48,235 bases of DNA from Macrostomum lignano (GCA_002269645.1 NIVC01003186.1:1-48235), one strand, 5' to 3'. Positions 15,101 to 45,000 are shown, counted from the stretch's first letter. Notes: generated by a model not told the origin, from the letters alone. Numbers and translations are program-made.

Positions 15101-18100
15101 AAGTCTCTCGGAGACTCCTGGCTCAGATTATCGCCTAGAAGTGCTGTGGAGTAGCTGGTCCACCTAACCTACAGACACAACTCGAACAGATTTCTGTCTG
15201 TTTGAGGCTCTGGATCTCAGAGCCGCCGAGAAAGTTTAGTGCCGAGAATGCTTCAGTTTGTTAGAATGCAATCAGAACAGATTCCTAGAAAGTGAGCTAG
15301 TCCAGCATCAAGGCAGAACATCTGGATGTGTAACGAGAGGCTCTCGGAGATTCCTGGCTCAGATTATCGCCTAGAAGTGCTGTAGAATAGCTGGTCAACC
15401 TAACCTACAGACACAACTCGAACAGATTTCTCTGTCTGTTTGAGGCTCTGGCTCTCAGAGCCGCCGAGAAAGTTTAGTGCCGAGAATGCTTCAGTTTGTT
15501 AGAATGCAATCAGAACAGATTCCTAGAAAGTGAGCTAGTCCAGCATCAAGGCAGAACATCTGGATGTGTAACGAAAGTCTCTCGGAGACTCCTGGCTCAG
15601 ATAATCGCCTAGAAGTGCTGTGGAGTAGCTGGTCCACCTAACCTACAGACACAACTCGAACAGATTTCTCTGTCTGTTTTAGGCTCTGGCTCTTAGGTGG
15701 TCCACCTAACCTACAGACACAACTCGAACAGATTTCTCTGTCTGTTTGAGGCTCTGGCTCTTAGGTGGTCCACATAACCTACAGACACAACTGAAGCAGC
15801 TCTCTCAGTCTGTTTGAGGCTTAGGCTCTCAGAAGGTGGTTCACCTCACCTACAGACACAACTCGAACAGATTTCTCTGTCTGTTTGAGGCTCTGGATCT
15901 GAGGTGGTCCACATAACCTACAGACACAACTGGAACAGATTTCTGTGTCTGTTTGATTGTCAGTTATTTTTATTTTCTACCTTTGTAGGAGCCTGTGGTT
16001 GATTTTGTTCGCCTGAGCTCGACGAGACTGACTGCGTTTCACCGAGATGAAGGTTAAAACGAACTGTAAAAGAAGATTTAAACCACTAATTGACGAGAAA
16101 TATAGAAAGGTTCATCATAGAGCTGAGCTGACGAAAGCGGATTCGATGGCGAGTAAGCTGAAATTCGTGAGAGAGGCAATGACAGATCAATAACAGAAGC
16201 GGTCCCGGACCACGGAGGCAGGGAAGGTCCAGGAGAATATTTCGTAGAAAAAATAAGAAGATAAGGCCATCATCTGCGTGAACGAAAAGATGAAAGTCGG
16301 TAAAATGATTGGCTTATCATATGATTGCTCACCAACTCACTCAGTATAATAGGACTGATGTAGTCAAATCAATTTAATTTCAGTTTTAGTAACTTTTGTC
16401 GTTATTAAAAATGCCCTTCAACTTCTTGTAGGCTCGTACTCGGATGACCTTTTTAACTAATGGAATCTTACGTTTGTTAACATGTATTTGAAGCATACAT
16501 TTTGACCTAAATTAGTTTTAATGAGTTTACAGTTAGTATTTGATATGATTCTGTATTTATTTTCAAAATGCTTTATTTTCATTCACCTTCTTGTATTCAC
16601 GCGACGCAACTAACTAATGCGATCGTACATTTGTTTAACCCGATTAACCCGATTAGTAATGCTAAATAAATTGGTTTGAACTTGGGATATTTTCATTAAA
16701 TGACGTCGTAACCCTTTTATCTGTTCTTTTTGAGAATTTCTGTTTTAATTAGTTCAAAAGAACAGTTTTAAGCAATAAATTTTCTACAACGAAAGAGGTC
16801 TAACTAAACCAACTGTTTTTTTGCGGTCCACCTAACCCGGTCCCCAAAACGTAGTTAGTGAACCACCACAGTTTCCCCGAACTGGCTATTCCGTCAAGTT
16901 AACAAAAAGATAACCCTAGCTAGCCTTTCGCGTTGTCAAAACAGACTCTATTTTTTAACCGGAATTGCGTGGTCCACGTAACGCATTAACATAACTCAGG
17001 TCCCGCTAAACACACAGACAGTCGTAAGAGTGTCTGTCTGTCTGTCTGACGACAGGAAAATGAAATGCCAGTCTCCGTTCTCACCTAGAAAGTCGACGGT
17101 GTACCGCCGACCTTTCTCCGCCTCCTCAGTCTCGTCTTCGTTCTCGCCGAGTTCATTCTCCAGCGGCCTCTGGCTGCCGTCCTTGGCCAGCAGCAGGTGG
17201 CGGTACTGCCTGGCCACGTGACTCCCCGGTAGCGTCCGGCGCAGCTCCCTGGCGCCGCGCAGGTCGAAAATGCAGCGAATTCCATACCGGTTTCTCAGCT
17301 CGTCGACTCCCTCGGCGGACAGGCGCTCAACGTAGCCGGAGCGGTACAGCAGGGCCCGACCCGACGGCAGGCTGACCTGACGAAAGTTGGGCAGTCGGCT
17401 CAGACTGCGGGTGCCCACCTCCAGGGCGAATGTCGGCTCCATAACTGTCGAATGTAGGGAACCGGGGGGGGGGGCGCTGGGCTCATGAACTCACTCATGA
17501 ACTCACTCATGAACTCACTCATGAACTCACTCATGAACTCACTCATGAATTCACTCATGAACTCACTCACAAACTCACTCATGAACTCATGGACTCGCTC
17601 ATGAACTCACTCATGAACTCACTCATGAACTCACTCATGAACTCACTCATGAACTCACTCATGAACTCACTCATGAACTCACTCATGAACTCACTCATGA
17701 ACTCACTCATGAACTCACTCATGAACTCACTCACAAACTCACTCATGAACTCATGGACTCGCTCATGAACTCACTCATGAACTCACTCATGAACTCACTC
17801 ATGAACTCACTCATGAACTCACTCATGAACTCACTCACAAACTCACTCATGAACTCATGGACTCGCTCATGAACTCACTCATGAACTCACTCATGAACTC
17901 ACTCATGAACTCACTCATGAACTCACTCATGAACTCACTCATGAACTCACTCATGAACTCACTCATGAACTCACTCACAAACTCACTCATGAACTCATGA
18001 ACTCACTCATGAACTCACTCATGAATTCATGAACTCACTCATGAACTCAATCATGAACTCTCTTATGAACTCACCCATGAACTCACTCATGAACTCATGG

Positions 18101-24529: not shown

Positions 24530-25235
24530 CTTGCCTCCTCCCAACAGCGACCGGACCCAAAGCTCCGCGTGTGTCACCAGCATTGGATCCTCAGGCCCGC
24601 CTGATCTCCGCCGCTGCCTCTGACCAGCCATTCTCTAACTGGGTCCGAGGATCGGGGAAGGGAGTCCAACCCCCTCAGCTTCCCCCCGCTCTCCAGCCTC
24701 ACCTGGTGGATCCAAACGCCTCCAGGATCCAACCCCAAACGCCGCCCGAGCCCCCAACCCCACTTTTCCCATTCTCCGCTCGGCTCCCCGCGGCGCTTCT
24801 CCCGATCTCCCAGAGCGAGTGCCGGAGCCCCACCCCCGGCCTCGGAGCCTCGGTGAGAGCGGCGCCACCCATAAAAAATGGCCTTCCTTCCCTCCAACAC
24901 GGGGCAGACAATCAGTGAAGAATCAGTGAATCTGGAGAAAATTTTCTGTCTAGAAGAAAATCATGAGCCTCATCAGTCCTCAAGCGGCGAGTGTTCACGT
25001 CCTGTGCTGCCCCCACTGCTCCTACATGACCCTGCAGCAGGGCAATCTGGTTTCCCACCTGTCCTCTGAGCACTGCACTGCTGCTCCTGAAAGCAAGGAA
25101 CTGGAAGAGCCGCAGCAACAGGCCGAGCCAAAGGTGCAGCTGCACAAGTGCACCCTGTGCAAGACCATATCAACCCAGTGGGCTCTGATGCTGGACCACA
25201 TGGCTCTGTACCATGACATCTCCGACACTGAGAAG
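24530..25235 (+). CDS. Pro-rich exon plus exon encoding two C2H2 zinc fingers (5' end of gene unresolved)
   Basis: Exon 24530-24852 (acceptor CCTTTCCCCTGCAG, donor TCG|GTGAGA) and exon 24954-25235 (acceptor TTTTCTGTCTAG, donor AAG|GTAATT) join in frame. Fingers CPHC-x12-HLSSEH and CTLC-x12-HMALYH both fit C-x2-C-x12-H-x4-H. Confidence 0.75.
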
Positions 25236-25239
25236 GTAA

Positions 25240-27980
25240 TTTTGCCTGCTTTGAAAATTTTCGTATTAGAACTCAAACCCCGTGCTCAAATCTCATTGGA
25301 CGCGGCTGATCTGTCCAGCTTCTCATTCGCGAGCTTCTCCCAGCCTCATCTCGTATGAAAATAAAGCCAATGAGAGCTCAGCTGCTGCTCTCCATCATCT
25401 CGGGATCTGGGAGAAACGGATTATTCCAACTTTCAGTCATTTGAGATGTTTAAATTGCTCAACCGGGACCCTTCTAATTCGAGAATTTTTCTGTGTAAAA
25501 TTCTTTGAAGAAGTTTGCACCATTGTGCCCAACGAACTGTTCCTGATGCAGCATAGAGTCTGGATAATGGACAGATTGAGAAATCTAAATGGAAAGACAA
25601 TAAAAAAACTGAAAAATAGCAAGAAAAAAACATTTTACTTAGGGAAATAGATCCGGATAGTAAGAGGGGTAGAGTAGAAAGGGGAGGAGGAGTAGAAGAG
25701 AGATAGAGGAAGAAAGGAGAGAGTAGACCGGATAAAAAAAGAGAAGGAAGAGTAAAGAGGGGAGAGTGGACAAGAGAAGAGAGTAGATAGAAGAGGGGAG
25801 AGTGGACAAGAGAAGAGAGTAGATAGAAGAGTAGAGACTGAACAGGGGAGAGTAAATAGGAGAGTAGAGTGTATTGACAGAGTAGAGTATAGAGTAGACA
25901 GTAGACAGGGTAAAGTAAAGAGATGAGAGCAGAGAAGGGAGAGTAGACAGGGTAGAGCAGAGAAGGGAGAGTAGACAGGGTAGAGCAGAGAAGGGAGAGT
26001 AGACAGGGTAGAGCAGAGAGGGGAGAGTAGACAGGGTAGAGCAGAGAAGGGAGAGTAGACAGGGTAGAGCAGAGAGGGGAGAGTAGACAGGGTAGAGCAG
26101 AGAAGGAACAGAGGCGGCAGTGAAACGGAAATGCGGCTCCCTCAGCCAGGCCAGCAGACTGCAGACCATGCAGTTTTACAGCCAGCCGGGTGTCTGTCTT
26201 CATCACCCCTTTCTCCCTCACTGCCTCAGCTCTGCTTTCGTCTACTTGAACTGGGGAGTTGGGACAAAGGAGGCTGGGTTCGCTGTGATGCTGCTCTCCA
26301 TCTCTGCCGCTGAATCCATCATCATCAATAGATTTCTCGGTGCAGCCAGAGGCCAAGCAGAGATGAGTCATCAGAGCCGCTCCCCTCGCAGCCTCTCTGC
26401 TTGGCCGAACTGCAATGGCTTTACCGAATGCGTTTAGTCTGTTTAGCTTTGAAATTTTCGTATCAGAACTCAAACCCCGTGCTCAAATCTCATTGGTCGC
26501 GCCTATGATATCCAGCTTCTCAATTGCGAATTTCTCTCAGCCTCAATCTATGAAAATAAAACCAATGAGAGCTCAGCTCTGCTCTCCATCATCTCGGGAT
26601 CTGGGAATAACGGATTATTCTGCTTCTGAATCTTGGGAATTTCAGTCGGAATTTCTGCGAGTGTTTTTCCCCCAAGTCTGTCGCTCAGCTGGGACTCGCC
26701 TAGAAGCACCAAATTTCATGGCGCAAGGCCTTAAGCAGAGCTAAACATTCACAAAATGGATGCTTTGAAACTTTTAGGCGATGTAAAATTTTCATGTAGG
26801 TCTTGTAAAAGCGACCTGTGTGTAGGAGACAATTTGAAAATGGAAATCTAAGGCAGAAGACAGCAAATGTCTTTTGTTTTTTAGCGATAAAAAGGGAATG
26901 CTATTTGGGAAGACTGGTTGAGTAGAGAGAGATAAGGAGAGAAAGTGGAGGAGGGTAGAGATAGGGGAGAAGAGAGGAGAGAAGGCGAGTAGTGAGTAGA
27001 TAGAGCAGAGAGAGGAGAGTAGAGAGTAGAGAGGGGAGAGTTGAGTAGAAAGGAAAGAGTAGAGAGTAGAGAGTAGAGTAGAGACGGAGATTTAAGAGTA
27101 GACAGGGTAAAGTAAAGAGACAAGAGTAGACAGTAGACAGGGTGGAGCAGAGAAGGGAGAGTAGACAGGGTAGAGAAGAGATGGGTGAGTAGACAGGGTA
27201 GAGCAGAGATGGGAGAGTAGACAGGGTAGAGCAGAGTAGACAGGGTAGATCAGAGATGGGAGAGTAGACAGGGTAGAGCAGAGATGGGAGAGAAGACAGG
27301 GTAGAGCAGAGAAGGGAGAGTAGACAGGGTAGAGCAGAGAAGGGAGAGTAGACAGGGTAGAGCAGAGAGGGGTGAGTAGACAGGGTGGAGCAGAGAGGGG
27401 AGAGTAGACAGGGTAGAGCAGAGAAGGGAGAGTAGACAGGGTAGAGCAGAGAGGGGAGAGAAGACAGGGTAGAGCAGAGAAGGGAGAGTAGACAGGGTGG
27501 AGCAGAGAGGGGAGAGTAGACAGGGTAGAGCAGAGATGGGAGAGTAAGACAGGGTAGAGCAGAGAAGGGAGAGTAGACAGGGTAGAGCAGAGAGGGGAGA
27601 GAAGACAGGGTAGAGCAGAGAAGGGAGAGTAGACAGGGTAGAGCAGAGATGGAACAGAGGCGGCAGTGAAACGGAAAGGCGGCTCCCTCAGCCAGGCCAG
27701 CAGAATGCAGACCAGTTTTACGGCCGGTGTCTGTCTTCATCACCCCTTTCTCCCTCACTGCCTCAGCTCTGCTTCCTCTACTTGAACTGGGGAGTTGGGA
27801 CAAAGGAGGCTGGGTTCGTTGTGATGCTGCTCTCCATCTCTGCCGCTGAATCCATCATCATCAATAGATTTCTCGGTGCAGCCAGAGGCCAAGCAGAGCT
27901 GAGTCATCAGAGCCGCTCCCCTCGCAGCCTCTCTGCTTGGCCGAACTGCAATGGCTTTACCGAATGCGTTTAGTCTGTTA
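25240..27980. repeat. Diverged tandem duplication (units ~25240-26440 and ~26441-27980), each containing a purine-rich ~28-bp minisatellite (AGAGCAGAGAAGGGAGAGTAGACAGGGT)n
   Basis: 25250-25420 matches 26448-26620; 26108-26425 matches 27654-27975. Purine arrays at ~25660-26107 and ~26915-27655. Confidence 0.85.
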
Positions 27981-29070
27981 GTCAGTCAGCTCGTAGATTG
28001 CGAGCAATTTCTCTCTCTGCTTCCATCGCCCCTTCCCGCTCGCGATCCCCACGCAATTCTCCGGGCACTATCTCTATCTCTACCAGCCCTCGCTCGGTCT
28101 GTGCCGCTGCGCCGCCGCTTCTAGGAGAAACTGGGGGGGGGGGTTGGGGTTCGAGGACAGGAAAATTTGCAGCGGCAGGAGAAGAAGAGGAGAAAGCAGA
28201 AGAGAGATAGCCTTTTTCCCCGGGGCGCTGCATAGGAGAAGCCTCGGGCTTGTCCATGCAACGGGGAGTTCCTGCGCACCATCTTGTTTATCTTCAGTCT
28301 CCGTCTCTACCTGCCCCCCCCCCTCACTCTCTCTTCGCTCATTTTCTCCGATTCCTCAGCCAGAGAGGCTGAGGCTGTATAACTGGGGCGGCCATCAGAG
28401 AGGGGGTCGCCGCTGCTGCCGCCGCTTATGGAATTTATGGAGCAGTCGGCCCCCAGCCGTATATTTCTGAATGCGGGCTTGCTATGCGCCCCTCTCCTCC
28501 GCCAGCCTCTTCTGCGCTGGGTCGGAGAGCGGGTGAAGGTCAAAGGGGTATAAAGGGAAATCTCCCCTTCTGAGGCTGGACAATCCAGCCGGATTACCGG
28601 AGACGATGCAGCTCCCAGTCTGTCGCCTGGGAAAGTCAAGGCCCCATACTATAAGCGTGAAAACAAACAATGCGGAGCTGCAGTCGGAAGAGGATCTCTC
28701 CGATTTCGGTCGGCGTCGGAGAGGAAGCTTTCGAAAGTCTCTCTCGGAGGGCTCCCCAATTATGAAAGCAACTGGGGAAGACTGAGAGAGAAGAGGCGAT
28801 GCGCAGCGGGGGTCCGGCCGCCCCCGCGGAGAATTCTCTCAGGCCGCTGGGATCCCAGAGCTGGCCTTCCATGGGCGTCAATCACTGGAGCCCCGAAGCT
28901 GCTCTCTGGGACCGCTGGCTGCCCCGTCTCTTTGCTGGCAAATCCCCTCGTTCTTCCATCTACTTTCTCCCGGCCGCCCGCCCCAAGGGCGCCACGGCAG
29001 CACACACGGGAGCCAATGCTGCAGCTCTCCCGTATTCCTTCTCTCTCCCCCCCCCTTTTGCGCTTTGCAG

Positions 29071-30280
29071 CAGATCGGTCTCTTGGCTTCCGAAGACCTC
29101 CGCCTGCAGCCCGGCAACCAGCAGCAGCAGCAGCAGCAGCAGCAAACTTCTCCCAGCCAGCAGCAGCCAATCGGTTCGAGGAAGAGAAAGTCAACCGTGC
29201 CGGTGAGTGAAGCCTCGAGGCTGCCCTGCCGCCGCCTCCCCCATCCGAGGCAGACGCGCAGCTATGCATGCGCAGAAGCCTCTTTACTGCCACTCAGTTT
29301 CTCCTCCCTGATCTGCCCTGCATGCCTGCTGGTCTCTGGCGCTCTGTCTCTGGAATAGCATCCCCTCAGCCTCTCGGAGCCCGCCCGGCAACCAGTGATG
29401 AATGGCCCCCCCCCGCCCCCTACCACTCTCTGTTCCCCCACTCTTCTCCATTTCTCTCTCTCTTGATTTCGGCTAGTCATTTTTTTACCTTGCCGCCTTC
29501 ATCCCAGCCGCAGCTGCCGGCCTCATCCTCACTCACCACCATGTTGCTGAAATCTCCCATCTCCCCAACCCCGCGACCCCAAGCCCTCTCCACATCCCTC
29601 CCGCTCCATCTCCATCCCCAAGTTTCCCTAAATATCCCGCGCTGCTGCCGGAGGGGCCTCGGGTCCACTTTGCTAGACCTCGAGTGAGCGAGAGAGACAG
29701 CGAGATGGAGAGCTGCGGGCAGCTAATTGGGGGGCTCGGGATGGGGAGAGATAAGACAGAAGCGGGAGAATCCAGTGATGGGCAGAGCCCCTTATCTATA
29801 AGCTTGGCGCTCCTTATCTATAAGCTTGGCGCTCCTTATCTATAAGCTTGGCGCCCCTCATCTATAAGCTTGGCGCTCCTTATCTATAAGCTTGGCGCTC
29901 CTTATCTATAAGCTTGGCGCCCCTTATTTATAAGCTTGGCGCCCCTTATCTATCCACAAATTTGTCAATCAATCTCAGGAGAAGCTCTGCTCGGATTCCG
30001 ATGACTCCGCAACGCCACTCGCTGTTTCCAACAGCAACGGAAAGCAGAAGCAGTCGCAGCCGCAGCAGCAGCTGCAGCAGCAGCAGCAAACTCCGACTCG
30101 AGTTGAGAAGCATTCGAACTCTGCAGCCAGGAATCGGAACAAGGAGGCTTTGCAGCAGCAGTTGCTCCAGCAGCAGCTTCAGCAGCAGCAGCAACAACAA
30201 CAGCAACGGCAGCAGCAGCAATACTATCAAAGCCAGCAACAGCAACAGCTCCAGCTTCAACTCAAGCTGCATCATCACAC

Positions 30281-30327
<47 letters not shown>

Positions 30328-32842
30328 CGAGCCTCCCCGCTGGCTTCTTCTTGTTCGGACCGACCAAGCTCGCCGCCTCGGGCCTGCAGCCGCAACTGCC
30401 GCAGCCGCAGCCGCAGCAAAACTTTCTTGGGCCAGCGCCGCCTCAGCTGCAGAGTTTTAATTTCGGCCGGTCTTTTCAACTGACACCGTCGCTGTCTGTG
30501 AGTTGCCACGTTCTCTGCTCGAATATTTAAATTTGCATTACTTGCCTACTATGAGTAGGATAATTATGCTTGTTTTGATGTGTTGAAATCTTTAGTCCGA
30601 CGCGACACTGATAGAGTAATTGATAGTGACAGTTCATAACGAGTGAGGGACAGATGTACATTTAGTGTGACTGACAGTCTCGGAGTGACAGTCTCGGAGT
30701 GACAGTCTCGGAGTGACAGTCTCGGAGTGACAGTCTCGGAGTGACAGTCTCGGAGTGACAGTCTCGGAGTGACAGTCTCGGAGTGACAGTCTCGGAGTGA
30801 CAGTCTCGGAGTGACAGTCTCGGAGTGACAGTCTCGGAGTGACAGTCTCGGAGTGACAGTCTCGGAGTGACAGTCTCGGAGTGACAGTCTCGGAGTGACA
30901 GTCTCGGAGTGACAGTCTCGGAGTGACAGTCTCGGAGTGACAGTCTCGGAGTGACAGTCTCGGAGTGACAGTCTCGGAGTGACAGTCTCGGAGTGACAGT
31001 CTCGGAGTGACAGTCTCGGAGTGACAGTCTCGGAGTGACAGTCTCGGAGTGACAGTCTCGGAGTGACAGTCTCGGAGTGACAGTCTCGGAGTGACAGTCT
31101 CGGAGTGACAGTCTCGGAGTGACAGTCTCGGAGTGACAGTCTCGGAGTGACAGTCTCGGAGTGACAGTCTCGGAGTGACAGTCTCGGAGTGACAGTCTCG
31201 GAGTGACAGTCTCGGAGTGACAGTCTCGGAGTGACAGTCTCGGAGTGACAGTCTCGGAGTGACAGTCTCGGAGTGACAGTCTCGGAGTGACAGTCTCGGA
31301 GTGACAGTCTCGGAGTGACAGTCTCGGAGTGACAGTCTCGGAGTGACAGTCTCGGAGTGACAGTCTCGGAGTGACAGTCTCGGAGTGACAGTCTCGGAGT
31401 GACAGTCTCGGAGTGACAGTCTCGGAGTGACAGTCTCGGAGTGACAGTCTCGGAGTGACAGTCTCGGAGTGACAGAATCCTCAACCAATCAAATCAAATT
31501 TGAATATTTCAGGTAACGGAGCAGCCCCAGCCCGAGGAGGTCCCGGCCGCGCTGGACCTCAGCGTCAAGGACGTCAAGACGCCGCAGCCGCCACAGCTGA
31601 TTCCGGGTGTCAAGTCCCTGTCGCCGCCAATGCTGCAGCAGCACCAGCAGCAGCCGCCGCCGCCGCCGCCGCCGCTGCACACACCGGGCCAGCCATTGGG
31701 CGCTCGACAGCGGCGCTCCGGCCAGCAGCGGCACCGCGCCTCAGCAGCCAGACGGGCCGCCAAGCTCAGCTCGCCCCCGATGAAGTTTTCCGAGGTGAAC
31801 TCGCCGGTCGCGGCGCCGGCGGCCTCCGAGGAGGATGGCTCTCTCCTGCTGTCAGGCGGCAGCGGCGGCGGCGGCGGCAGGAGCAAGGCGCAGCGGCAGA
31901 ACTTCAGCCCGGCGCAGAACCGCCTGCTGTTGAAGTGGTTCAACGAGCACAGCGACAAGCCCTACCCCTCTGGCGACGACACCAAGGAGCTGTCGGAGAT
32001 CACCGGGCTGAACTACGCGCAGGTGAAGAAATGGTTTGCAAACAAGAGGATGCGATCGAAGGTCACGGGCCAAGGCCTCGACACGCAGCCGCTGTCGTCT
32101 GCAAACAGCCCGCAGCAGTGGGGCGATGAGGCGGAGGTGAGGCTGGAGAAGCTCAAAGCGGCTTGGCGTCCTGAAGCCTAGAAACAGCTGGAGAGTAGAA
32201 AGTTGAAAGGGTAGAGTAGAGAGTAGAATTGGGAGAGCAGAGTAGAATTGGGAGAGCAGAGTAGAATTGGGAGAGCAGAGTAGAATTGGGAGAGCAGAGT
32301 AGAATTGGGAGAGCAGAGTAGAATTGGGAGAGCAGAGAGTAGAAAGCGGAGAATAGAGAGTAGAATTGGGAGAATAGAGAGTAGAATTGGGAGAGCAGAG
32401 AGTAGAAAGGAGAGAGTAGAGAGTAGAATGGGAGAGCAGGGAGTAGGAAGGGGAGAGCAGAGAGTAGAAAGGAGAGAGTAGAGAGTAGAAAGGAGAGAGT
32501 AGAGAGTAGAATTGGGAGAGCAGAGAGTAGGAAGGGGAGAGCAGGGAGTAGGAAGGGGAGAGCAGGGAGTAGGAAGGGGAGAGCAGGGAGTAGGTAGAAA
32601 GGGTAGAGTAGAGAGAAGTAATAGCCGTTGACTTGCTTTAGTAAATGCACAGTAACAAGATGGTAAAATTTTCAATAATAATTATCTACAGTTTCCTAGC
32701 CTCACCCTTACTTACCCTTACATCCTTGCAGTTGTGCAGCATCAACAGAATGGATCAGGAGAACCTGGAGAAGGACAGCCTGAGTCTCAATCTCAACGAT
32801 CATCCAATGAACAGCGACAGCGGCGAGGCGACCGAGTGTTGA
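29071..32842 (+). CDS. PolyQ-rich divergent TALE-class homeodomain transcription factor (exons 29071-29202, 29979-30497, 31513-32136, 32732-32842)
   Basis: All GT-AG, phase-0 junctions, open frame to TGA at 32842. Homeodomain at 31882-32061: SKAQRQNFSPAQNRLLLKWFNEHSDKPYPSGDDTKELSEITGLNYAQVKKWFANKRMRSK, with TALE loop spacing and PYP. Also an RKRK basic motif, an ALDLS CtBP-type motif and long Gln runs. Read-through of the last donor would instead stop at 32181. Confidence 0.85.
29789..29952. repeat. 22-bp minisatellite (CCTTATCTATAAGCTTGGCGCT) x7 plus a partial unit
   Basis: Tandem copies ending ~26 nt before the acceptor at 29978. Confidence 0.95.
30672..31475. repeat. Perfect 14-bp minisatellite (TGACAGTCTCGGAG)n, ~57 copies, intronic
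   Basis: No variant unit seen; explains track ORFs 30564..31484 and 30634..31488. Confidence 0.98.
32205..32615. repeat. Purine-rich ~19-bp minisatellite (AGAGCAGAGTAGAATTGGG)n and variants in the last homeobox intron
   Basis: Tandem copies between the donor at 32137 and the acceptor at 32731. Confidence 0.9.
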
Positions 32843-36041: not shown

Positions 36042-39000
36042 TCAGCCGGTTAGAAAGGACAAACGGGTCAGCTTCCCGTATCCTGCGGCCAGCGCCATCA
36101 CCAGGCAGCTGGTTAGTAGTGCGGCGGAGACTGTGAGAGCAGAGGCGGTGTTGTAGTCGATGCAGTATGGGCACTGGAAGCTGCCGCACACCTTGCAGAT
36201 GTCGCTGCTATGCAGCGAGCGGGCGCTGTAGAACGAGAAGTTCCTGTTGTCTGCGGGTGGCGGGTTGTTAGGGAATGGGCTCGATTTTCAGTAAGGAGTA
36301 CATAAATTTCTGGTTGATTAAGTTTTCTACGCAACATATCGGTGACAATACAAACCTTTATTTAGCATCATTTATCTCATTTGATTCGATACAAATGTTC
36401 CATACCTAGTTTCCCCTCAAAATTCCCCTCTGATTCTCTTGAAATTATCCTCGATTCTCTTGAAATTATCCTCTGATTCTTTTGCTATACCCCTCTGATT
36501 CTCTTGCAATTCCCCTTTGGTTCTCTTGCAATTCCCCTCTGATTCTCTTGAAATACCCCTCTGATTCTCTTGCAATTCCCCTTTGATTCTCTTGCAATTA
36601 CCCTCTGATTTTCTTTCAATACCTCTCTGATTCTCTTGCAATACTCCTCTGATTCTCTTGGAATTAGAATCTGATTCTCTTAAGATTCCCTTCCGATTCT
36701 CTTGGGAATTCCCCTCTGATTATCTTGTAAATCCCCCTGATTCTCTTGCAATTCCCCTTTGATTCTCTTGAAATTATCCTCTGATTCTCTTGTAATTCCC
36801 CTCTGATTTCCTGCAATCCCTATCTGATTCTCATGGAAACTCCCCTCTGACAATCCTCCCACAATTCCCACAATCACTCCGGACCCTCACCAAATTCAAA
36901 GTACTCATAGACGTTGCATGGCTGCTCAACAGTGGTGTTGGCGACTGGGTACCACCTCGGTATGGGGATGGTGACGCAGGTTGGCTGCACGGAAGTGAAC
37001 TGGAATGAAAATCAGAACAATAATTGCAATGTACTTTAGTCATGTACAGAGCAAAGGGCAGACCGTTGTCGTGCGGTTCACAGCCCACAGAGTGCACATG
37101 CCTGATGATTAGACAATCAGGGCACACCCTGGCGCCATTGTGTCCACAGCCCTACAGCAGCCCGCAACTGCGCACTCACGTTGGTGAAGAAGACATTGAG
37201 GTACTGCCCGACCATCCAGATGTGCCGCAGGCCGCGAACATTGCTAGTTTGCACAAAATTGCGCATATCATAATTAGTAACCAGGTAGCCGGATGGCACG
37301 GTGAACTGCAGCAGCGCCATGCCGCTGGTCTCCGATCTGGCCGTCCAAGTCCATCTGGAATGGAGAAATTCGTTAAACATTATTTAATTATAATAGATGA
37401 ATAATGTCATGTGAGAAATCTTAGATTGACAGGCAATGGTGTGTCAGCGAGTGGGGTCCTGCTCAGCGGTTTCTAAGAACACTAGTTAAACATACTCTAG
37501 AATGTGCACTAGTTAAATACGGGTATCTATGTGCATTAATTAAACATGCATTACAATGAGCATCAGGTAAACTAAACATACATTACAATGTACATTAGTT
37601 AAACATACATTGCAGTGTACACTAGTTAAGCATACATTACAGTGTACACTAGTTAAACATACACTACAGTGTACATTGGTTAACATACACTACAATGTAA
37701 ATTAGTTAAATATACATTACAATGTACACTAGTTAAACATACTCTAAAATGTACATAGGGTAAACATAAACTACAATGTACATTACTTCAACATACATTA
37801 CAGTGTACATTACTTCAACATACATTATTACAGAGTACATAGGGTAAACATACACTACAGTGTACATTGGTTAAACATACACTACAGTGTACATTGGTTA
37901 AACATACACTACAGTGTACATTGGTTAAACATACATTACAGTGTACATTGGTTAAACATACACTACAGTGTACATTGGTTAAACATACACTACAGTGTAC
38001 ATTGGTTAAACATACATTACAGTGTACATTGGTTAAACATACACTACAGTGTACATTGGTTAAACATACACTACAGTGTACATTGGTTAAACATACACTA
38101 CAGTGTACATTGGTTAAACATACACTACAGTGTACATTGGTTAAACATACACTACAGCGTACATTGGTTAAACATACACTACAGTGTACATTGGTTAAGC
38201 ATACACTACAGTGTACATTGGTTAACATACACTACAGTGTACACAGGCCAGAGTACACCGTCTCGGCTCACCTGGCGCACGCAGTCATGTGCATCATACT
38301 GCTATTCCGGCCGCTGAATGTCGGCACGCAGCTGAGCTCGAAGGTCTGGAACGGCGTGTTCGGCTTGTTGGGATCGATGGCATTCTTCACTAGGAACTCC
38401 TGCTCGACGCTTTTCGTGGTGAACATGTGCAGCACGGCGCGGCCGCTGCCTGTAGCTCGGATCATCACCTCGCCCCAGGTGTTGTCGTTGTCCAAGTAGA
38501 AAGTTCGCGGAATGCTCAGATTGTTGCCGTCCAGCCTGAGACTGCTGGATTTGCTCGTGTCGGAGGTCGGGTTGATGTCCACCTGCAGGGAGTAGATGAC
38601 TCGGTTGAAGTCCAACTGGGCGACCTCGCGAAGTGCCCTGACAGCGAACAGCGTGTCCTGCGTGGAGATCCAGCCCTGGGGAGCGTTCTTCGTCTCCGTG
38701 ATGAAGTTGATGACCTTGGTGATGTTGCTCTTCAGCTCTGGCTTGGAGCTCACGGATTTGAACATGGCGAGCATGGCGAACGAGGAAGCCTGCAGGGAAG
38801 GCATTGATAAACTCACCGTGTTAAACTCACCGTATTGATTGCTTTTAACTAACTGGGAATTCCGAAATCTCACGGGAAATCCAAAAATCTCAAGGGGAAT
38901 CACAAGATCTCACAGGAAGCCTCAAAATCTTATAGGGATTCTCAAAATCTCAGGAATCCCAAAATCAATGCAACATCTATAGAAATGAAATATTTTAATA

Positions 39001-42000
39001 TTTAACAGAAACTCGAACACGAAATTAAACAACCTCAAAAATCTCAAAGAAACCTTAACCGAGAAGCCTCACCGGTAACCCCCACCCGGGGAAGCCTCAC
39101 CGGTAACCCCCACCCGGGGAAGCCTTACCGGTAACCCCCACCAGGGGAAGCCTCACCGGTAACCCCCACCCGGGGAAGCCTCACCGGTACCCCAACCGGG
39201 GAAGCCTCACCCTCACCGGTACTCCAACCGGGCAAGCCTCACCGGAACCCCAACCGGGGAAGCCTCACCGGTACCCCAACCGGGGAAGCCTCACGCTCAC
39301 CGGTACTCCAACCGGGGAAGCCTCACCGGAACCCCAACCGGGGAAGCCTCACCGTTAGCCCCCACCCAGGGGAAGGTCACCGGAAACCCCAACCGGGGAA
39401 GCCTCACCCTCACCGGTACTCCAACCGGGGAAGCCTCACCGGAACCCCAACCGGGGAAGCCTCACCGGTACCCCAACCGGGGAAGCCTCACCCTCACCGG
39501 TACTCCAACCGGGGAAGCCTCACCGGAAACCCAACCGGGGAAGCCTCACCGGTACCCCAACCGGGGAAGCCTCACCCTCACCGGTACCCCAACCGGGGAA
39601 GCCTCACCGGAACCCCAACCGGGGAAGCCTCACCGTTAGCCCCACCCAGGGGAAGGTCACCGGAAACCCCAACACGGGGAAGCCTCACCGGTACCCCAAC
39701 CGGGGAAGCCTCACCCTCATCGGCAACCCCAACCGGGGAAGCCTCACCGGAAACCCTACCCCAGGAAGCGAACCCCCAGCCGCCTAATTGAAGCCCGCTC
39801 ACCTGCACAGCATAAGCATCGTTGGGCCACTCAATCCTGGCCTTGATGATCACTTTTCCAGCTGAATCTGGCTCCCGGATCAGCGGCTTGACCCGTCTGT
39901 TGGCCCAATAGAGATAGTTGTCATCCCTGGCAATGCTCATCAGCAGGTTCATAGCCGTGCTCTTATCCGAGGAGGAGGAGTCGAAGGTGAGCGCGTAGGC
40001 GGTCATGGCCAGACTGAGGGCGTCCTCCGTCATTTTGCTCAGGTGCCGCTTCAGGTACTGAATGGCCGCGGTGGAGACCCGGCTGGCATGCGAGCCCAGA
40101 CTCATGGGGATGCTCGGGTGCCTGGTTGCGATCACCGCCAGAGCTGTGATGGGGACGCGGCGCAGGTAGACATTGTTAGCCGGGTTCACCGACTTGTCCT
40201 TGATGTAGACATTAAAGTACTTCATGTCCCATTGGATATCGTCTGTGAAAGAGCCGGCCAGGCTGGGGTCCACAGCTCCAGTGTCCTGGGTGGCATTCAA
40301 GTACAGGATGAACTTCTGGAACAGGTCAGCGTTGATGGCGGTGACTCGGTCCCACTGCGAGAAGGAGGTCTCCGCCAGGGTGAACAGGCCGAACGCTGTC
40401 AAGAAAGTGCTTGTCTCCGTGTTGAACCGTTCGGGAAAGTTGGCCATGCCGCCAGTGACAGGGTTGATGTAGAATGAGAGTCTGGACAGCTGCGAGTTTA
40501 CGTACTCGAGAGCCGAGTTCAGAGTTGCCGCCTCCAGCTGCTTGGTCATGCGCAGGTAGTGCAGCATCTGCACGTTCCAGTTGATGTTGAACAGGACGCT
40601 CTCGCCGGACCCGATGGGCCGCCAGACGGTGCTGGCCGCGTCTCCGTAGGGCATCTCGTTGCCGAGGGACGGGCCGACAATGTCTCCGACCACACTGATC
40701 TTGGTGTACTTGGAGCCGGGCACGAAACGGCGCCAACGGCGCTCCGGCTCTACGAAGGCCTGCTCAGGCGTGATGAAGAAGTTCTGGGCGAGCAGCTCGG
40801 AGTTGGAGACCAGGTCGAGCAGGATGGGAGTGCTGTAGTTGTTGGGGGCGCCGTTGATCTGCGGGGGACATTGGAGGGCACCGTTTACTGAATTGGTTGA
40901 CTACTATTGATAGAAGGTACAGATACTGTAGCTGTGTACGCTCGTACACAGACTACTCATGATTTTACAGATACAGGTAATGTACCCGCGTACACAGACC
41001 ACTGTTGATTGTACAGATACAGACACTGTACCTGCGTACAGACTACTCATGATTGTACCTACAGATAGTGTACCAGTGTACAAAAAGTGCACTTTGATGC
41101 AGAGACAACAAGCCAGACTCACAATGACGGGCACATTAACGGTGGAACACTCTCCGCCATTGAACGAGTAGGCGCAGAAGGTGATGGTGGTATTTCCGGT
41201 GTTCCTGGGCAGCACAGGGAAGTACAGCATCCGGTGACCACCAGCGGGCAGGAAGACCACCGTGTGCACGTTCTCGTTGCTGGCCAACTCTGGGGCATAA
41301 CTGTTCACCTGGCCTCGGTAGCCCACCTTGATGAAGTCGTACTCGGTACTTTTCTTCAGCTCGATAATCACCTGGAGTTCGATTGTTTGGCGGAAGCTTA
41401 AGCCTTAAGATACGGTGACTATGGAGCTTTTCTTTCTATCTTTCAGATCCCCTATGCACCCAAGGATCCCTAACAGCACGGATCCCATGTTTCCCCAAGG
41501 ATCCCTAACAACCCGGATCACAAATATCCCCAAGGATCCCTACCAACCCGGATCACAAATATCCCCAAGGATCCCTAACAACCCGGATCACAAATATCCC
41601 CAAGGATCCCTAACAACCCGGATCCTATATATCCCCAAGGATCCCTAACAACCTAGATTTCTAACAACCCGGATCCCATATTTCTCCAAGGATCCCTAAC
41701 AACCCGGATCACAAATATCCCTAAGGATCCCTGACAGCATGGATCCCATATTTCCCCAAGGATCCCTGACAGCATGGATCCCATATTTCCCCAAGGATCC
41801 CTAACAACCCGGATCCCATATTTCTCCAAGGATCCCTAACAACCCGGATCCCATATTTCTCCAAGGATCCCTAACAACCCGGATCGCATATTTCTCCAAG
41901 GATCCCTAACAACCCGGATCCCAAATATCCCCAAGGATCCCTAACAACCCGGATCCCAAATATCCCCAAGAATCCCTAACAACCCGGATCGCATATTTCC

Positions 42001-45000
42001 CCAAGAATCCCTAACAACCCGGATCCTATATATCCCCAAGGATCCCTAACAACCCCGATCCCAAATATCCCCAAGGATCCCTAACAACCCGGATCCCATA
42101 CTTCTCCAAGGATCCCTAACAACCCGGATCCCAAATATCCCCAAGGATCCCTAACAACCCGGATCCCAAATCCCCAGACCCAGCACCAGCCCAGGGCAGC
42201 TTACCTCAGTCCAGTAGTCGAACCTGTTGAACACGGCCACCCGAACTCCAATCTGCTCTCCCCAATAGGCGTACGGCGGCGCTTCCAGCACCATGTAGAA
42301 CCGTCGGGTGGAAGTGAACCTGGTCGGCACGCTCTGCACCTGAACGCCGCGCTCGCCATCGATGGCGATGGCGCCGACCACCCAGGAGGTCTCCAGCTTC
42401 GGCGTCACCGCCGGATTGAACGGAACTCGGCCGTTCATGTTGGCTCTGGAACGGGTGCAGCAAGGCGGAGCCGTGTCTACTGGGACTGTCTACCGTGTCT
42501 ATTGGGACTGTCTACCGTGTCTACTGGGACTGTCTACCGTGTGTACTGGGACTGTCTACCGTGTGTACCGGGACTGTCTACCAGTGTCTACTGGGACTGT
42601 CTACCGTGTGTGTCTACTGGGACTGTGTCTCTCTACAAATAGGTCTACTCTATCTACAGACAATGTCCTGGCTCTCACTTCATATAGACATCCTGCCAAA
42701 GCCACAGATCGTCATATATAAAGTGCCGATATTCGAATTTGAATTTCGGCTCAACGTAGCCGGGCGCGCTAGTCAAGTTGACCCGATCGCAGTTCATCTC
42801 GTCCACCCCGGTGTTGCAGTCCAACTTGCCGTCGCATATGTGCCGATAGCCGTAGCACTCGTCCGGTGAGCCCGCGTAGCACGGGAAAGCTCGGTCTGGG
42901 TTCAGCGTCTCGTTGCAGGTGTCTGTACAGGTGATAATGATTAGATGAAGTATACCATGTACTTTTCAATGGTTAAAAGTACACCAATTACTAAAGTACA
43001 CCAAGTACTTTTCAATGGTAAAAAGTACACCAAGTACTTTTAATGGTTAAAAGTACACTAACTACTTTTTAATGGTTAAAGGTACACCAAGTACTTTTCA
43101 ATATTTAAAAGTACTTTTAAAAGTCTACAAGTGTACCATGTACTTTTCAATGTTTAAAAGTACACAATGTACTTTTAATCTGGGGTTATTAAAAAACTTA
43201 CGCCAGAAGGTGACCTTAGTGTAGTTGGAGTCCGTGAACATGATCATGCCGGAGTAGTTCATAGTCTTGTTCGCATCAGGGCCGTAGGTGGGGCTGGGGA
43301 AGTACTGCAACTGCGGCATGTCTGAGGTGTCATCAAACCAAGCGAACTGCAGGGGCTGCTCCGCGTGGGCCTCGTAGGACATCTGCTCCTGCAGCAGCTG
43401 TGGGATGGTACAGCAGGGGCATTGGGATCAGGATTTGACAGGGTTGAGCTTTGAGATTGGGATTTGGGATTTGAGATTGGGAATTTGGGATTTCTCGGGG
43501 ACGGGATTTGGGATTCGGATTTGTGATTAGGTTTGAGACTGGAATTTCGGATTTGAGATTTCGATTAGGGATTCGACAGTGTTGGGATTTGGAAATTTCA
43601 AAAGATTCGATGGGATGATAAAAAATGTAGACAGGGATCTCGGGATTTGGATTTAATAATGGGATCAAAGATTGGGATCTGAGAATTGGAATAATGATTT
43701 AAAGGCACAGGTATTATCGATTCTCGGGATTCCATACTCACCGTGTAGGGCTCCAGGATGACCTTGTTGCCATACCGCAGGTACAGGTCGTACGGGATGG
43801 CCGACAGCAGGACAAACGAGCCAACATTGGCGCCGGTGATCCAGCCCGTGACAGATTTACCTGTGAGATCCGAGCCCTGAGTCACCTGCAGATCCACTGA
43901 GTTGATGCTGAGCACGTCGACAAAGAAGGACATGGAGTCCGTGACCAGCTCGCCGTCCTGCTTCATGAAGTAGGCCACGATCCGCGCGATGGGCGCTATC
44001 TCTCGGGACAGGGCGATGGAGAAGGTGCGAGACTGGACGCCAGCCGGCATGAACAGGATGTCGCTGTGCAGAATGTTGCCGCCGCCAAGGATTATGTAAT
44101 AGATTCTGTCCGAGTAGTAGTTAGTCTTGATGTTGAACACCATGTACCGGTCCACCGTGGGTTTCACTGTTGAGGTTGTCACCTGCATGTAGGCACCGGA
44201 TGGAGAGTAGTGCCTGAACAGGAATTGCTCAGCTGTGCGGACATCCTTTGAAGTTGTGGACGAGAGCAGCACCGCGTACAGGCGGTAGCTCAGGCAGTTC
44301 ATGGATGTCTCGATGGGGTAGCGGACGACGGAGTCGTCGGGAATGGGGATCGACGCGTCTGTCTTTACCCGCTTGCTGCGGTCGCAGTAGACCTCCAGGG
44401 TGAGCTTCCGGTAGCGGAAGTCCGGCTTCCGGCCGTCTGGTTGAAAAACCCACAGCTGGGAAATTGTTTTGGGGGTGGATTTGGGATATTTTGATGCATT
44501 GTGAGATCGGGATTCGGGATCACCTACAGTCTGGGATTCGGGATCATCTACAGTTTGGGTTTCGGAATCATCTACAGTTTGGGATTCGGGATCATCTACA
44601 GTTTGGGATTCGGGATCATCTACAGTTTGGGATTCGGGATCATCTACAGTTTGGGATTCGGGATCATCTACAGTTTGGGATTCGGGATCATCTACAGTTT
44701 GGGATTCGGGATCATCTACAGTTTGGGATTCGGGATCATCTACAGTTTGGGTTTCGGGATCATCTACAGTTTGGGATTCGGGATCATCTACAGTTTGGGA
44801 TTCGGGATCATCTACAGTTTGGGATTCGGGATCATCTACAGTTTGGGATTCGGGATCATCTACAGTTTGGGATTCGGGGTCATCTACAGTTTGGGATTCG
44901 GGATCATCTACAGTTTGGGATTCGGGGTCATCTACAGTTTGGGATTCGGGATCATCTACAGTTGGGGATTCGGGATCGCACTCTCACCAGGGCGGTGAAG

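What the first reader, a model, noticed from the sequence alone, without database searches (positions are those of the whole stretch)
24530..32842. Possible C2H2 zinc-finger / TALE-homeodomain chimeric transcription factor
Seen: the two-finger exon ends in a phase-0 donor (25235|GT). The next clear plus-strand exon (29071) starts in phase 0, and the frame stays open through polyQ exons, an ALDLS motif and the TALE homeodomain to 32842. All five introns from 24853 on are phase 0. Established: animal ZF-class homeobox proteins (Teashirt/TSHZ, ZEB, ZFHX, ADNP) use non-TALE homeodomains, Teashirt and ZEB also carry PxDLS CtBP motifs, and canonical animal TALE families (PBX, MEIS, PREP, IRX, TGIF, MKX) lack C2H2 fingers. 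Inference: a lineage-specific, exon-shuffled repressor that converges on the Teashirt/ZEB architecture with a TALE domain. The 3.8-kb joining intron is the unproven link.
Basis: partly seen in the sequence, partly recalled or inferred. Interest (0 to 1): 0.8.

Follow-up and report, generated by a model that had tools for sequence, protein, structure and literature searches.

The report
Flatworm zinc-finger TALE homeobox gene
This stretch of the flatworm Macrostomum lignano genome most likely holds a single five-exon gene for a transcription factor with two N-terminal C2H2 zinc fingers and a TALE-type homeodomain, a combination shared with tapeworms but absent from the homeobox classifications I could read.

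Summary
They are 24963-25235 (start codon plus two C2H2 fingers), 29071-29202, 29979-30497, 31513-32136 (TALE homeodomain) and 32732-32842. All have AG/GT borders, all are phase 0, and they splice to 552 aa.

The unproven 3.8-kb link is now well supported by comparison:
- A M. lignano paralog locus has a homologous finger exon only 569 bp upstream of the homolog of exon 29071, same strand and phase. A public model (A0A1I8H3Y9) joins them.
- A second paralog model (A0A1I8FDA7) carries fingers and homeodomain in one protein.
- In three tapeworm-type loci the finger exon lies on the same strand upstream of the homologous exons and the TALE homeodomain. The separating intron measures 64 and 71 bp in the two loci where I mapped it. 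Overlapping Hymenolepis models cover the whole protein.

So the architecture is old in flatworms, not specific to this species.

Not supported or unproven:
- the proposed upstream exon 24530-24853;
- "repressor" (the motif is ALDLS, not PxDLS);
- exon shuffling.

No transcript data were available for this locus. A finger-less isoform remains possible, because the M. lignano spliced leader ends in ATG and would be in frame at 29071. The homeodomain is PBX/Exd-like but lacks a PBC domain. A weak ADNP_N resemblance of the fingers is inconclusive.

The parts
24867..24876 (+). ACCCATAAAA, a possible TATA-like promoter element about 95 nt upstream of the start codon
   Evidence: An identical 10-mer lies at the same distance from the finger-exon ATG in paralog locus L001 (8999-9008; ATG at 9092). 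It is preceded by a similar GCCCC.CCCCC.GCCTC block. The promoter role is inference only.
24963..25235 (+). Coding exon 1: start codon plus two C2H2 fingers (ZF1 25008-25073, ZF2 25149-25214); donor AAG|GTAATT, phase 0
   Evidence: Translation. Homologs at L001:9092-9382 (tblastn E 4.5e-15) and in P0002/P0014/P0020, tapeworm proteins and P0036/P0047. All Zn ligands are conserved except in finger 1 of the P0002/P0014 group. AlphaFold2 secondary structure is beta-beta-alpha, linker, beta-beta-alpha, at low pLDDT of 53.
25236..29070 (+). Intron 1 (3835 bp), inflated by a tandem duplication of a 1.2-1.5 kb unit (about 25250-26443 and 26446-27979) with 28-bp minisatellites; it also holds the AATAAA at about 25362 and the GC-rich 28-29 kb stretch
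   Evidence: 207-nt block 26237-26443 against 27773-27979, 99% identical, spacing 1536. The homologous intron is 569 bp in L001 and 64-71 bp in tapeworms. No homologous coding segment lies inside it.
29071..29202 (+). Coding exon 2: QIGLLASEDLRLQPGN, polyQ, PIGSRKRKSTVP (basic cluster 29173-29193, likely a nuclear localisation signal); acceptor TTGCAG|CAG
   Evidence: There is no in-frame ATG between the stop at 28783-28785 and the exon, so it needs an upstream start. It is homologous to L001:9953-10108 (QEDDLLVVRDLKLPGN...GSRKRKLTVP). The GS(R/K)4 motif is also present in P0002, P0005 and the tapeworm proteins. The acceptor fits the M. lignano trans-splice motif [T/C]TNCAG.
29979..30497 (+). 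Coding exon 3: Gln-rich linker
   Evidence: The junction ...TVP|EKL... is conserved in P0020. The tail of the exon and its junction to the next exon are in public model P0004.
31513..32136 (+). Coding exon 4: ALDLS(V)K motif (31549-31563), Pro/Gln-rich region, TALE homeodomain (about 31885-32073)
   Evidence: Pfam Homeobox_KN 2.4e-14 and Homeodomain 3.5e-12. Gapless 59-residue alignment to Extradenticle/PBX1 TALE homeodomains, E 1.6e-10. P0004 matches the window at 97-99% (tblastn with the low-complexity filter on). This is the only part conserved at DNA level with the paralogs (82% and 72%).
32732..32842 (+). Coding exon 5: C-terminal 36 aa and TGA stop
   Evidence: The junction WGDEAE|LCSINRMDQ is present in public models P0004 and P0001.

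Best explanation
One gene, about 7.9 kb from ATG to stop with five coding exons, encodes a 552-aa nuclear transcription factor. The window matches M. lignano public model A0A1I8GZ23 at 97-99%.

Its parts, N- to C-terminal, are:
- two C2H2 fingers separated by a long linker;
- a basic GSRKRK cluster;
- Gln/Pro-rich linkers;
- a conserved (A/V/I)LDLS(V/L)K motif;
- a PBX/Exd-like TALE homeodomain.

The finger exon is cis-spliced across a repeat-inflated 3.8-kb phase-0 intron to exon 29071. The gene belongs to a flatworm family, found in Macrostomum paralogs and tapeworms, in which this order of modules is conserved.

Shown here: the exon structure, the domain identities, and conservation of the finger-to-homeodomain arrangement across paralogs and tapeworm-type loci.

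Inferred:
- that the junction is actually used at this locus;
- that the homeodomain binds DNA;
- that the fingers add DNA or partner specificity;
- that the LDLS motif recruits a CtBP-like corepressor;
- that the basic cluster is a nuclear localisation signal.
For: 1. Structure. All borders are AG/GT and phase 0, with a 552-aa ORF. Exon 29071 has no in-frame ATG of its own.

2. Paralog L001.
- Finger exon 9092-9382|GTGAGG, a 569-bp intron, then TTGCAG|CAA at 9953. The next exon is homologous to window exon 2 in the frame continuous with the fingers.
- UniRef A0A1I8H3Y9 (P0020) reads ...AESRQ|QEDDLLV...GSRKRKLTVP|EKLPTD..., exactly that splicing.

3. Another paralog group. P0002 (A0A1I8FDA7) and P0016 contain the fingers, GSRKRKS, ILDLSLK and the TALE homeodomain in one model.

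4. Tapeworms.
- In Anoplocephala (L003) and Hymenolepis (L004) the finger exon is separated by 64- and 71-bp phase-0 introns from the exon carrying GS(R/K)4.
- H. diminuta models P0042 (fingers plus GSKKRK exon) and P0039 (GSKKRK exon through ALDMS to the TALE homeodomain) overlap by 75 identical residues.
- In A. perfoliata the finger 'gene' is followed 440 bp later, on the same strand, by the homeodomain 'gene'.
- A third tapeworm-like contig (L005) is collinear.

5. Sequence conservation stops at the donor. Read-through tails differ between the window and L001.

6. Between window and paralogs only the homeodomain is alignable at DNA level. Conservation of the finger exon is therefore protein-level selection, not recent duplication.
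Against: - No RNA evidence was obtainable for this locus. No protein in the searched collections contains the window's own finger exon.
- The UniRef models may be partly ab initio predictions.
- The donor GTAATT is only a moderate match to the M. lignano GT[G/A]AG motif.
- The NCBI transcript-guided models of two paralogs lack fingers. P0003 starts at an out-of-frame ATG inside the exon-2 homolog. P0005 has its own 15-aa first exon, and no finger exon lies within 10 kb upstream. So finger-less family members or isoforms exist.
- The exon-2 acceptor fits the trans-splice motif, and the spliced leader ends in ATG, which would be in frame.
- A stop (25356-25358) followed by AATAAA lies 120 nt past the donor.
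Confidence: 0.8

Rival explanations
1. Two transcription units only. A small finger protein (about 131 aa, stop at 25356-25358, poly(A) signal AATAAA at about 25362) is followed by a separate TALE gene. The TALE mRNA begins by spliced-leader trans-splicing at 29070/29071 and takes its initiator AUG from the leader (M-QIGLL...). This could be a two-gene operon or use a promoter in the GC-rich 28-29 kb region.
For: - The M. lignano leader is ...TTGCATG, and about 30% of genes are trans-spliced, with acceptor motif [T/C]TNCAG (PMC8629364).
- The acceptor is TTGCAG|CAG in phase 0.
- Exon 2 has no ATG of its own.
- A stop plus AATAAA lies shortly after the finger exon.
- A. perfoliata is annotated as two adjacent genes.
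- Use of the flatworm leader AUG as an initiator is known from my own memory of Cheng et al. 2006, J Biol Chem. I did not check this here.
Against: - The finger exon ends at a GT donor in phase 0 in the window, in L001 and in two tapeworms. Protein conservation stops exactly there, and the read-through tails are unrelated.
- In tapeworms the gap is a 64-71 bp intron, too short for a poly(A) site plus an outron. Models P0028 and P0042 splice across it.
- P0020, P0002 and P0016 join fingers to downstream exons.
- The AATAAA lies inside a repeat unit that recurs at 26446-26620.
- The A. perfoliata split falls between the ALDMS exon and the homeodomain exons, not after the fingers. H. diminuta P0039 bridges that split.
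Confidence: 0.08
2. Both forms are made. The same acceptor at 29070/29071 is used in cis, giving the finger-containing protein, and in trans with the spliced leader when transcription starts inside intron 1. The trans form would be a finger-less TALE protein starting at the leader's AUG. This is an addition to the best explanation, not an alternative to it.
For: The evidence is the same as for rival 1. In addition, the phase-0 design means both the cis exon and the leader supply an in-frame AUG. Finger-less relatives exist: P0005 with its own short exon 1, and P0003.
Against: There is no direct evidence for an internal promoter or for leader-containing reads. A cis donor upstream normally outcompetes trans-splicing (Conrad et al., as cited in PMC8629364).
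Confidence: 0.25
3. At this particular locus the finger exon is a decoupled relic. The 3.8 kb of duplicated repeats would have broken the link, and only the TALE part is expressed, although the family ancestrally had fingers.
For: Intron 1 is 7 to 60 times longer than its homologs and consists largely of recent tandem repeats. No public model includes this finger exon.
Against: - The finger exon keeps an intact ORF, its ATG, all eight Zn ligands, the family-invariant residues and a usable donor.
- Every other intron of this gene also holds a minisatellite without disrupting the public model P0004.
- The downstream exons would then lack a start codon unless trans-spliced.
Confidence: 0.05
4. 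The protein is a highly diverged flatworm relative of the vertebrate ZF-class gene ADNP (or ZHX), not a new fusion. Under this reading the N-terminal finger pair and the homeodomain were inherited together.
For: - Finger pairs of two tapeworm-like relatives, from unnamed ENA/Logan assemblies, pass the Pfam ADNP_N cut-off on positions 73-131 (P0046 34.0 bits, P0045 28.9 bits, cut-off 27). Others score 15-19 bits.
- ADNP and ZHX share the same N-to-C order of fingers then homeodomain.
- The ZHX1 finger pair (2ghf) is hit at E 0.001.
Against: - The window, P0020 and P0014 give no ADNP_N hit.
- The family consensus scores only 19.9 bits, less than its score to a ZNF462 finger model, so the signal does not grow with a profile proxy.
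- The exhaustive finger-profile search found no specific non-flatworm relative.
- The homeodomain is a 63-residue TALE closest to PBX/Exd.
- Only about 60 of the 753 ADNP_N positions are matched.
- Adnp and Zhx are regarded as vertebrate-specific (PMC4901127).
Confidence: 0.07

Closest known systems
PBC class TALE homeodomain proteins (PBX1 / Drosophila Extradenticle)
   Same: - The homeodomain has 63 residues, with the three-residue loop extension and the PYP motif.
- It shares RxNF at the N-terminal arm and WF.NKR.R in helix 3.
- It aligns without gaps over 59 residues, about 39% identical, E 1.6e-10.
- A tapeworm paper notes that unclassified flatworm TALE genes return extradenticle as best BLAST hit (PMC6225667).
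   Different: - No PBC-A/B (MEINOX-like) domain was detected.
- Residue 50 is Ala, not Gly.
- It carries an N-terminal C2H2 pair, polyQ linkers and the LDLS motif, none of which PBC proteins have.
[quoted passage not shown]
   Same: The nearest non-flatworm homeodomains found (P0007-P0010, E 5.5e-14 to 6.7e-12) share QVKKW(F/M)ANKR(V/M)RS. Some also carry SRKRKS or PLDLS motifs upstream of the homeodomain. Such lineage-restricted TALE genes are described in PMC6118893 and PMC6225667.
   Different: Those proteins have two TALE homeodomains and no fingers. The searchable text of these papers does not mention zinc fingers in any TALE clade. I built no phylogeny, so clade assignment is open.
ZF-class homeobox proteins (ADNP, ZHX, TSHZ, ZEB, ZFHX)
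   Same: C2H2 fingers and a homeodomain sit in one protein. ZHX and ADNP also begin with a pair of Cx2Cx12Hx4H fingers followed by homeodomain(s). ZEB and TSHZ carry PxDLS-type motifs (established knowledge). There are weak hits to ADNP_N and to the ZHX1 finger pair.
   Different: Their homeodomains are not TALE. The ZF class is itself polyphyletic (PMC2211742). The flatworm protein has only two fingers, and its homeodomain is PBC-like. ADNP_N similarity is partial and inconsistent.

Membership tests
TALE superclass of homeodomains | [quoted passage not shown] | tested here: met
   There are 32 residues from F20 to F49, against 29 in typical homeodomains (counted on the sequence). The domain aligns without gaps to the Exd/PBX1 TALE domains. 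Pfam Homeobox_KN gives 53 bits against a cut-off of 24.
TALE superclass of homeodomains | Conserved P-Y-P in the loop and W48, F49, N51, R53 in helix 3 | tested here: met
   The sequence reads ...HSDKPYPSG... and ...KKWFANKRMR.... The paralogs and tapeworm orthologs have the same residues.
PBC class (PBX/Exd) | PBC-A/PBC-B domain N-terminal to the homeodomain | tested here: not met
   Pfam scans of the full 552-aa protein, P0002 and P0039 at E up to 1 give no PBC domain.
PBC class (PBX/Exd) | Gly at homeodomain position 50 (PMC4901127 table) | tested here: not met
   Position 50 is Ala (WFANKR) in the window and in all flatworm relatives.
C2H2 zinc finger | Cx2-4Cx12Hx3-5H ligand pattern, conserved across relatives | tested here: met
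   Two Cx2Cx12Hx4H units are present. All ligands are invariant in 11 relatives, except finger 1 of the P0002/P0014 paralog group.
C2H2 zinc finger | Match to curated C2H2 profiles, and a beta-beta-alpha fold | tested here: inconclusive
   - The window exon gives zf-C2H2 19 bits (cut-off 25.2) and zf-Di19 21.8 bits.
- A Hymenolepis-like relative from a Logan assembly (P0043) passes zf-C2H2 at 26.2 bits.
- The profile hits CTCF finger pairs in the PDB at E 5e-12.
- The AlphaFold2 model shows beta-beta-alpha twice, but at pLDDT 53.
ADNP family (ZF class) | Match to Pfam ADNP_N (753 positions, nine fingers) above the gathering score | tested here: inconclusive
   Only positions 73-131 match. Two relatives pass (34.0 and 28.9 bits, cut-off 27), four fall below, and the M. 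lignano proteins give no hit. The family consensus scores 19.9 bits.
ADNP family (ZF class) | Typical-length (non-TALE) ADNP homeodomain | not testable with these tools
My recollection that the ADNP domain has 60 residues is memory only.
Spiralian TALE-IV clade | Two TALE homeodomains in one protein, and placement in the clade by phylogeny (PMC6118893) | tested here: not met
   The window protein, the paralogs and the tapeworm orthologs have a single homeodomain, whereas P0007-P0010 have two. Phylogenetic placement was not tested.
CtBP-recruiting repressors (PxDLS motif) | P-x-D-L-S core motif | tested here: not met
   - The window has A-A-L-D-L-S-V-K, with no proline at the first position.
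- Relatives have VLDLSVK, ALDLSLK, ILDLSLK and ALDMS.
- The motif is conserved and resembles P-DLS-K, but it is not canonical, and binding is untested.

The most novel reading that the evidence does not exclude
A flatworm-wide, previously undescribed homeobox family pairs an N-terminal C2H2 finger pair with a PBC-like TALE homeodomain. In M. lignano, one phase-0 acceptor would serve both cis-splicing (finger-containing protein) and spliced-leader trans-splicing. In the trans case the leader's own AUG would start a finger-less isoform. Choice of transcription start would then switch a DNA- or partner-binding module on or off without any alternative exon.
Probability: 0.2. Interest if true: 0.7.

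Novelty: new variant of a known kind. Interest (0 to 1): 0.55.

Why it matters
Animal TALE homeodomain proteins (PBC, MEIS, TGIF, IRO, MKX) are defined partly by their companion domains, and none is described with zinc fingers. The 'ZF class' is defined by fingers plus non-TALE homeodomains.

A finger-TALE family conserved from Macrostomum to tapeworms adds a further independent joining of fingers and a homeodomain. It gives a concrete synapomorphy candidate for rhabditophoran flatworms. It also shows that current annotations split or truncate the gene in all three annotated species (M. lignano, H. diminuta, A. perfoliata).

M. lignano supports transgenesis and RNAi, so the function of the fingers relative to the homeodomain can be tested directly. 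The tapeworm orthologs belong to a TALE expansion that has drawn interest in parasite development.

Tried and rejected
- Searching with the full spliced protein was swamped by polyQ and gave only 3 hits. I repeated it with the low-complexity stretches removed.
I used a finger-only alignment instead.
- The P0002 locus is not on record, so that paralog's intron could not be examined.
- L002 (paralog P0005) has no finger exon within 10 kb. It has a private 15-aa first exon.
- The other hits of the finger profile (P0015-P0035) are generic multi-finger or repeat proteins, not relatives.
- ADNP lead: it was followed with a Pfam scan of nine relatives and of the family consensus. It did not strengthen.
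- The PDB holds no closer finger relative than CTCF or ZBTB fingers.
- The AlphaFold2 model of the finger exon was too uncertain (pLDDT 53) for a fold search, so none was run.
- Literature searches found no description of a finger-TALE protein, and nothing for the paralog gene identifiers.
- No spliced-leader RNA gene lies in the window.
- DNA-level comparison of window and paralog loci finds only the homeodomain, so introns and promoters are not alignable by BLAST. A pairwise alignment of the 170 nt upstream of the ATGs shows only short shared blocks.
Full report
**What is in the sequence**

- 24963-25235: ATG through ...GAGAAG|GTAATT.
- 29071-29202: TTGCAG|CAG through ...GTGCCG|GTGAGT.
- 29979-30497.
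- 31513-32136.
- 32732-32842: ends in TGA.

Every border is AG...GT, every exon is a multiple of three, and the spliced ORF is 552 aa.

Exon 1 encodes two units of Cx2Cx12Hx4H. Exon 4 carries AALDLSVK and a homeodomain that passes Pfam Homeobox_KN (53 bits, cut-off 24) and Homeodomain.

Two cautions apply:
- The polyQ exon region is largely open in all three frames, so 'the frame stays open' proves little there.
- The window's finger exon is below the Pfam C2H2 cut-offs.

The proposed upstream exon 24530-24853 does not hold up, for four reasons:
- The GT is at 24853-24854.
- The open frames there have no ATG.
- An in-frame TAG sits three codons before the ATG at 24963.
- The donor lies in 22 nt that the paralog's upstream region lacks.

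**Source of the window**

UniRef A0A1I8GZ23 (P0004), from Macrostomum lignano, is a truncated model. It covers the tail of exon 3, exon 4 and exon 5, and tblastn maps it at 97-99% identity with the low-complexity filter on. So the window matches M. lignano, and a public model already uses the last two junctions. No protein in the collections searched contains the window's own finger exon.

**The key question: is the finger exon joined to exon 29071?**

Exon 29071 cannot start translation by itself. Its frame is closed by a stop at 28783-28785, and there is no ATG before the exon.

Four lines of comparative evidence tie it to the finger exon.

1. Paralog locus L001 (NIVC01000981.1).
- It has a homologous finger exon (tblastn E 4.5e-15) at 9092-9382, ending CAG|GTGAGG in phase 0.
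- A 569-bp intron filled by a minisatellite follows, then TTGCAG|CAA at 9953.
- The next exon reads QEDDLLVVRDLKLPGN...IATGSRKRKLTVP. That is the counterpart of the window's QIGLLASEDLRLQPGN...PIGSRKRKSTVP, in the frame continuous with the fingers.
- A public M. lignano model, A0A1I8H3Y9 (P0020), has exactly this splicing and continues into the next exon.

2. A second paralog group. P0002 (A0A1I8FDA7), P0014 and P0016 place fingers, GSRKRKS, ILDLSLK and the TALE homeodomain in one model.

3. Tapeworms.
- Anoplocephala perfoliata KAM7542594.1 (P0028) has the finger pair, GSRRRK and ALDMS. The next annotated gene, 440 bp downstream on the same strand, holds the TALE homeodomain.
- Hymenolepis diminuta VUZ47815.1 (P0039) runs from GSKKRK through ALDMS to the TALE homeodomain.
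- The H. diminuta finger exon lies just upstream of that model's annotated start. Conservation (YKFAELRHSVNS) extends upstream of the annotated Met.
- Another H. diminuta model (P0042) joins the finger exon to the GSKKRK exon and overlaps P0039 by 75 identical residues.
- The intron after the fingers is 64 bp in L003 and 71 bp in L004, phase 0, and five residues after the last His. The window intron lies seven residues after it, and the L001 intron six.
- A third tapeworm-like contig (L005) has the same collinear order.

4. Protein conservation ends exactly at the donor. The read-through tails of the window and of L001 are unrelated and stop within 14-40 codons.

At DNA level only the homeodomain aligns between the window and the paralogs. 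So the finger exon has been kept by selection on the protein over a long time.

I conclude that the fusion is real for the family and very probably for this locus. Direct RNA proof here is still missing.

**Why intron 1 is 3.8 kb**

It contains a tandem duplication of a 1.2-1.5 kb unit (about 25250-26443 and 26446-27979). A 207-nt block within it is 99% identical between copies at a spacing of 1536. Each unit carries a 28-bp minisatellite, with 6.5 and 18.8 copies.

Each of the other three introns of the gene also holds a minisatellite. One is a perfect 14-bp array of 57 copies at 30672-31475.

**The rival that cannot be dismissed**

The M. lignano spliced leader is CGGTCTCTTACTGCGAAGACTCAATTTATTGCATG. 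About 30% of genes are trans-spliced, and the acceptor motif is [T/C]TNCAG (PMC8629364). The exon-2 acceptor is TTGCAG|CAG in phase 0.

A leader added there would therefore supply an in-frame AUG (M-Q-I-G-L-L...). That flatworm leader AUGs can initiate translation is from my memory of Cheng et al. 2006 and was not checked here.

As the sole mode this conflicts with the conserved donor and the tapeworm mini-introns. As an additional, finger-less isoform from an internal start it is plausible.

Finger-less relatives exist. P0005 has its own 15-aa first exon. NCBI model P0003 of L001 lacks fingers, but it starts at an ATG that is out of frame with the conserved exon-2 peptide, so its N-terminus looks wrong.

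**What the domains are**

*Homeodomain.* The best solved relatives are Extradenticle and PBX1. The alignment is gapless over 59 residues at E 1.6e-10, with RxNF, PYP and WF.NKR.R shared. It is therefore a genuine TALE domain of PBC-like sequence. It has Ala at position 50 and no PBC domain.

The nearest non-flatworm homeodomains are unnamed proteins with two TALE homeodomains (P0007-P0010). They resemble the spiralian TALE-IV genes of Barton-Owen et al. (PMC6118893). They have no fingers, but some carry SRKRKS or PLDLS motifs. Tapeworm work already noted unclassifiable extradenticle-like TALE genes in a parasitic-flatworm expansion (PMC6225667).

*Fingers.* The module HVL(C/R/Q)CPxCx(F/Y)xxL...H....H, a 10-25 residue linker, then (Y/L/F)xCxxCxxx(S/T)T(Q/E)xxL(M/L)xxHxxx(Y/F)H is conserved in 11 sequences.
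- A profile of it hits CTCF finger pairs in the PDB.
- The AlphaFold2 model shows beta-beta-alpha twice, at low confidence.
- Two tapeworm-like relatives pass Pfam ADNP_N on positions 73-131, the first two ADNP fingers. However, the M. lignano proteins give nothing, and the family consensus scores only 19.9 bits, below its match to a ZNF462 finger model.
- The exhaustive search found no specific relative outside flatworms.

I treat ADNP or ZHX kinship as an open lead, not a finding.

**Likely mechanism**

All of this is inferred:
- The TALE homeodomain binds DNA.
- The widely spaced finger pair adds either DNA contacts or a protein-binding surface.
- GSRKRK acts as a nuclear localisation signal.
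- The conserved (A/V/I)LDLS(V/L)K may recruit a CtBP-type corepressor. It resembles the P-DLS-K motif but lacks the proline, so 'repressor' is a hypothesis only.

**Comparison with what is known, and novelty**

[quoted passage not shown] My literature searches found no description of a finger-TALE protein.

Fragments of the family are in public databases under generic names such as 'C2H2-type domain-containing protein' and 'Homeobox domain-containing protein'. At least one model (A0A1I8FDA7) already contains both parts. So the novelty lies in recognising the family and its conservation, not in new sequence.

I rate it a new variant of a known kind, of moderate interest.

**Limits**
- No transcript data were available.
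- The taxon of P0036/P0047 is unknown.
- No planarian or trematode member was identified.
- No phylogeny was built.

Noticed in passing
window 7923-15956: An 8-kb satellite of a 238-bp unit (with 71-, 376- and 476-bp sub- and higher-order periods, up to 96-97% identity) lies between two minus-strand exons. Both exons hit the same Pfam family, Y_phosphatase3: 16999-17490 matches profile positions 25-98, and 5688-6182 matches positions 101-170 and includes a VHCFLGKDRTG (C-x5-R) active-site motif. A roughly 10.8-kb intron of a tyrosine-phosphatase-like gene therefore appears to carry the satellite.
   Followed up: partly
window 38271-46624, minus strand: Exons of an alpha-2-macroglobulin / thioester-protein-like gene. 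Pfam hits are MG2 (45896-46624), the A2M bait region (43601-44380), A2M (42154-42489) and the TED domain (39581-40900 and 38271-38909). Minisatellites sit between the exons.
   Followed up: partly
window 43601-44983, minus strand: The open frame containing the A2M bait-region exon continues without a stop through the 24-bp minisatellite at 44509-44977. In that frame the array reads as about 19 copies of DDPESQTV. Whether this is coding (a repeat-expanded bait region) or intronic was not resolved.
   Followed up: no
window 30672-31475: A 14-bp minisatellite (TGACAGTCTCGGAG) with 57.4 copies at 100% identity lies inside intron 3 of the finger-TALE gene. All four introns of the gene contain a minisatellite, as do the paralogs' introns in L001 and L002.
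   Followed up: partly
L001 10001-10108 (NIVC01000981.1, BOX15_Mlig026076g1): The NCBI protein for this paralog (P0003) starts MEHQQA at an ATG that is out of frame with the conserved exon-2 peptide, and it skips the finger exon 620 bp upstream. UniRef model A0A1I8H3Y9 (P0020) reads the conserved frame. The NCBI N-terminus looks mis-annotated, or it represents an aberrant transcript.
   Followed up: partly
L003 10001-23455 (Anoplocephala perfoliata CM142492.1) and L004 9516-24553 (Hymenolepis diminuta CABIJS010000256.1): The tapeworm orthologs are split or truncated in public annotation. A. perfoliata has two adjacent 'genes', one with the fingers and one with the homeodomain. The H. diminuta model starts at an internal Met and omits the finger exon. 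The upstream neighbour, an mRNA cap N7-methyltransferase on the opposite strand, is syntenic in both.
   Followed up: yes
window 25368-25378 and 26566-26576; L001 about 9459-9469: A CCAAT-box-like GCCAATGAGA lies in both copies of the intron-1 repeat unit. A similar string lies in intron 1 of paralog L001. This may be chance or an internal promoter element, which would bear on the finger-less isoform idea.
   Followed up: no
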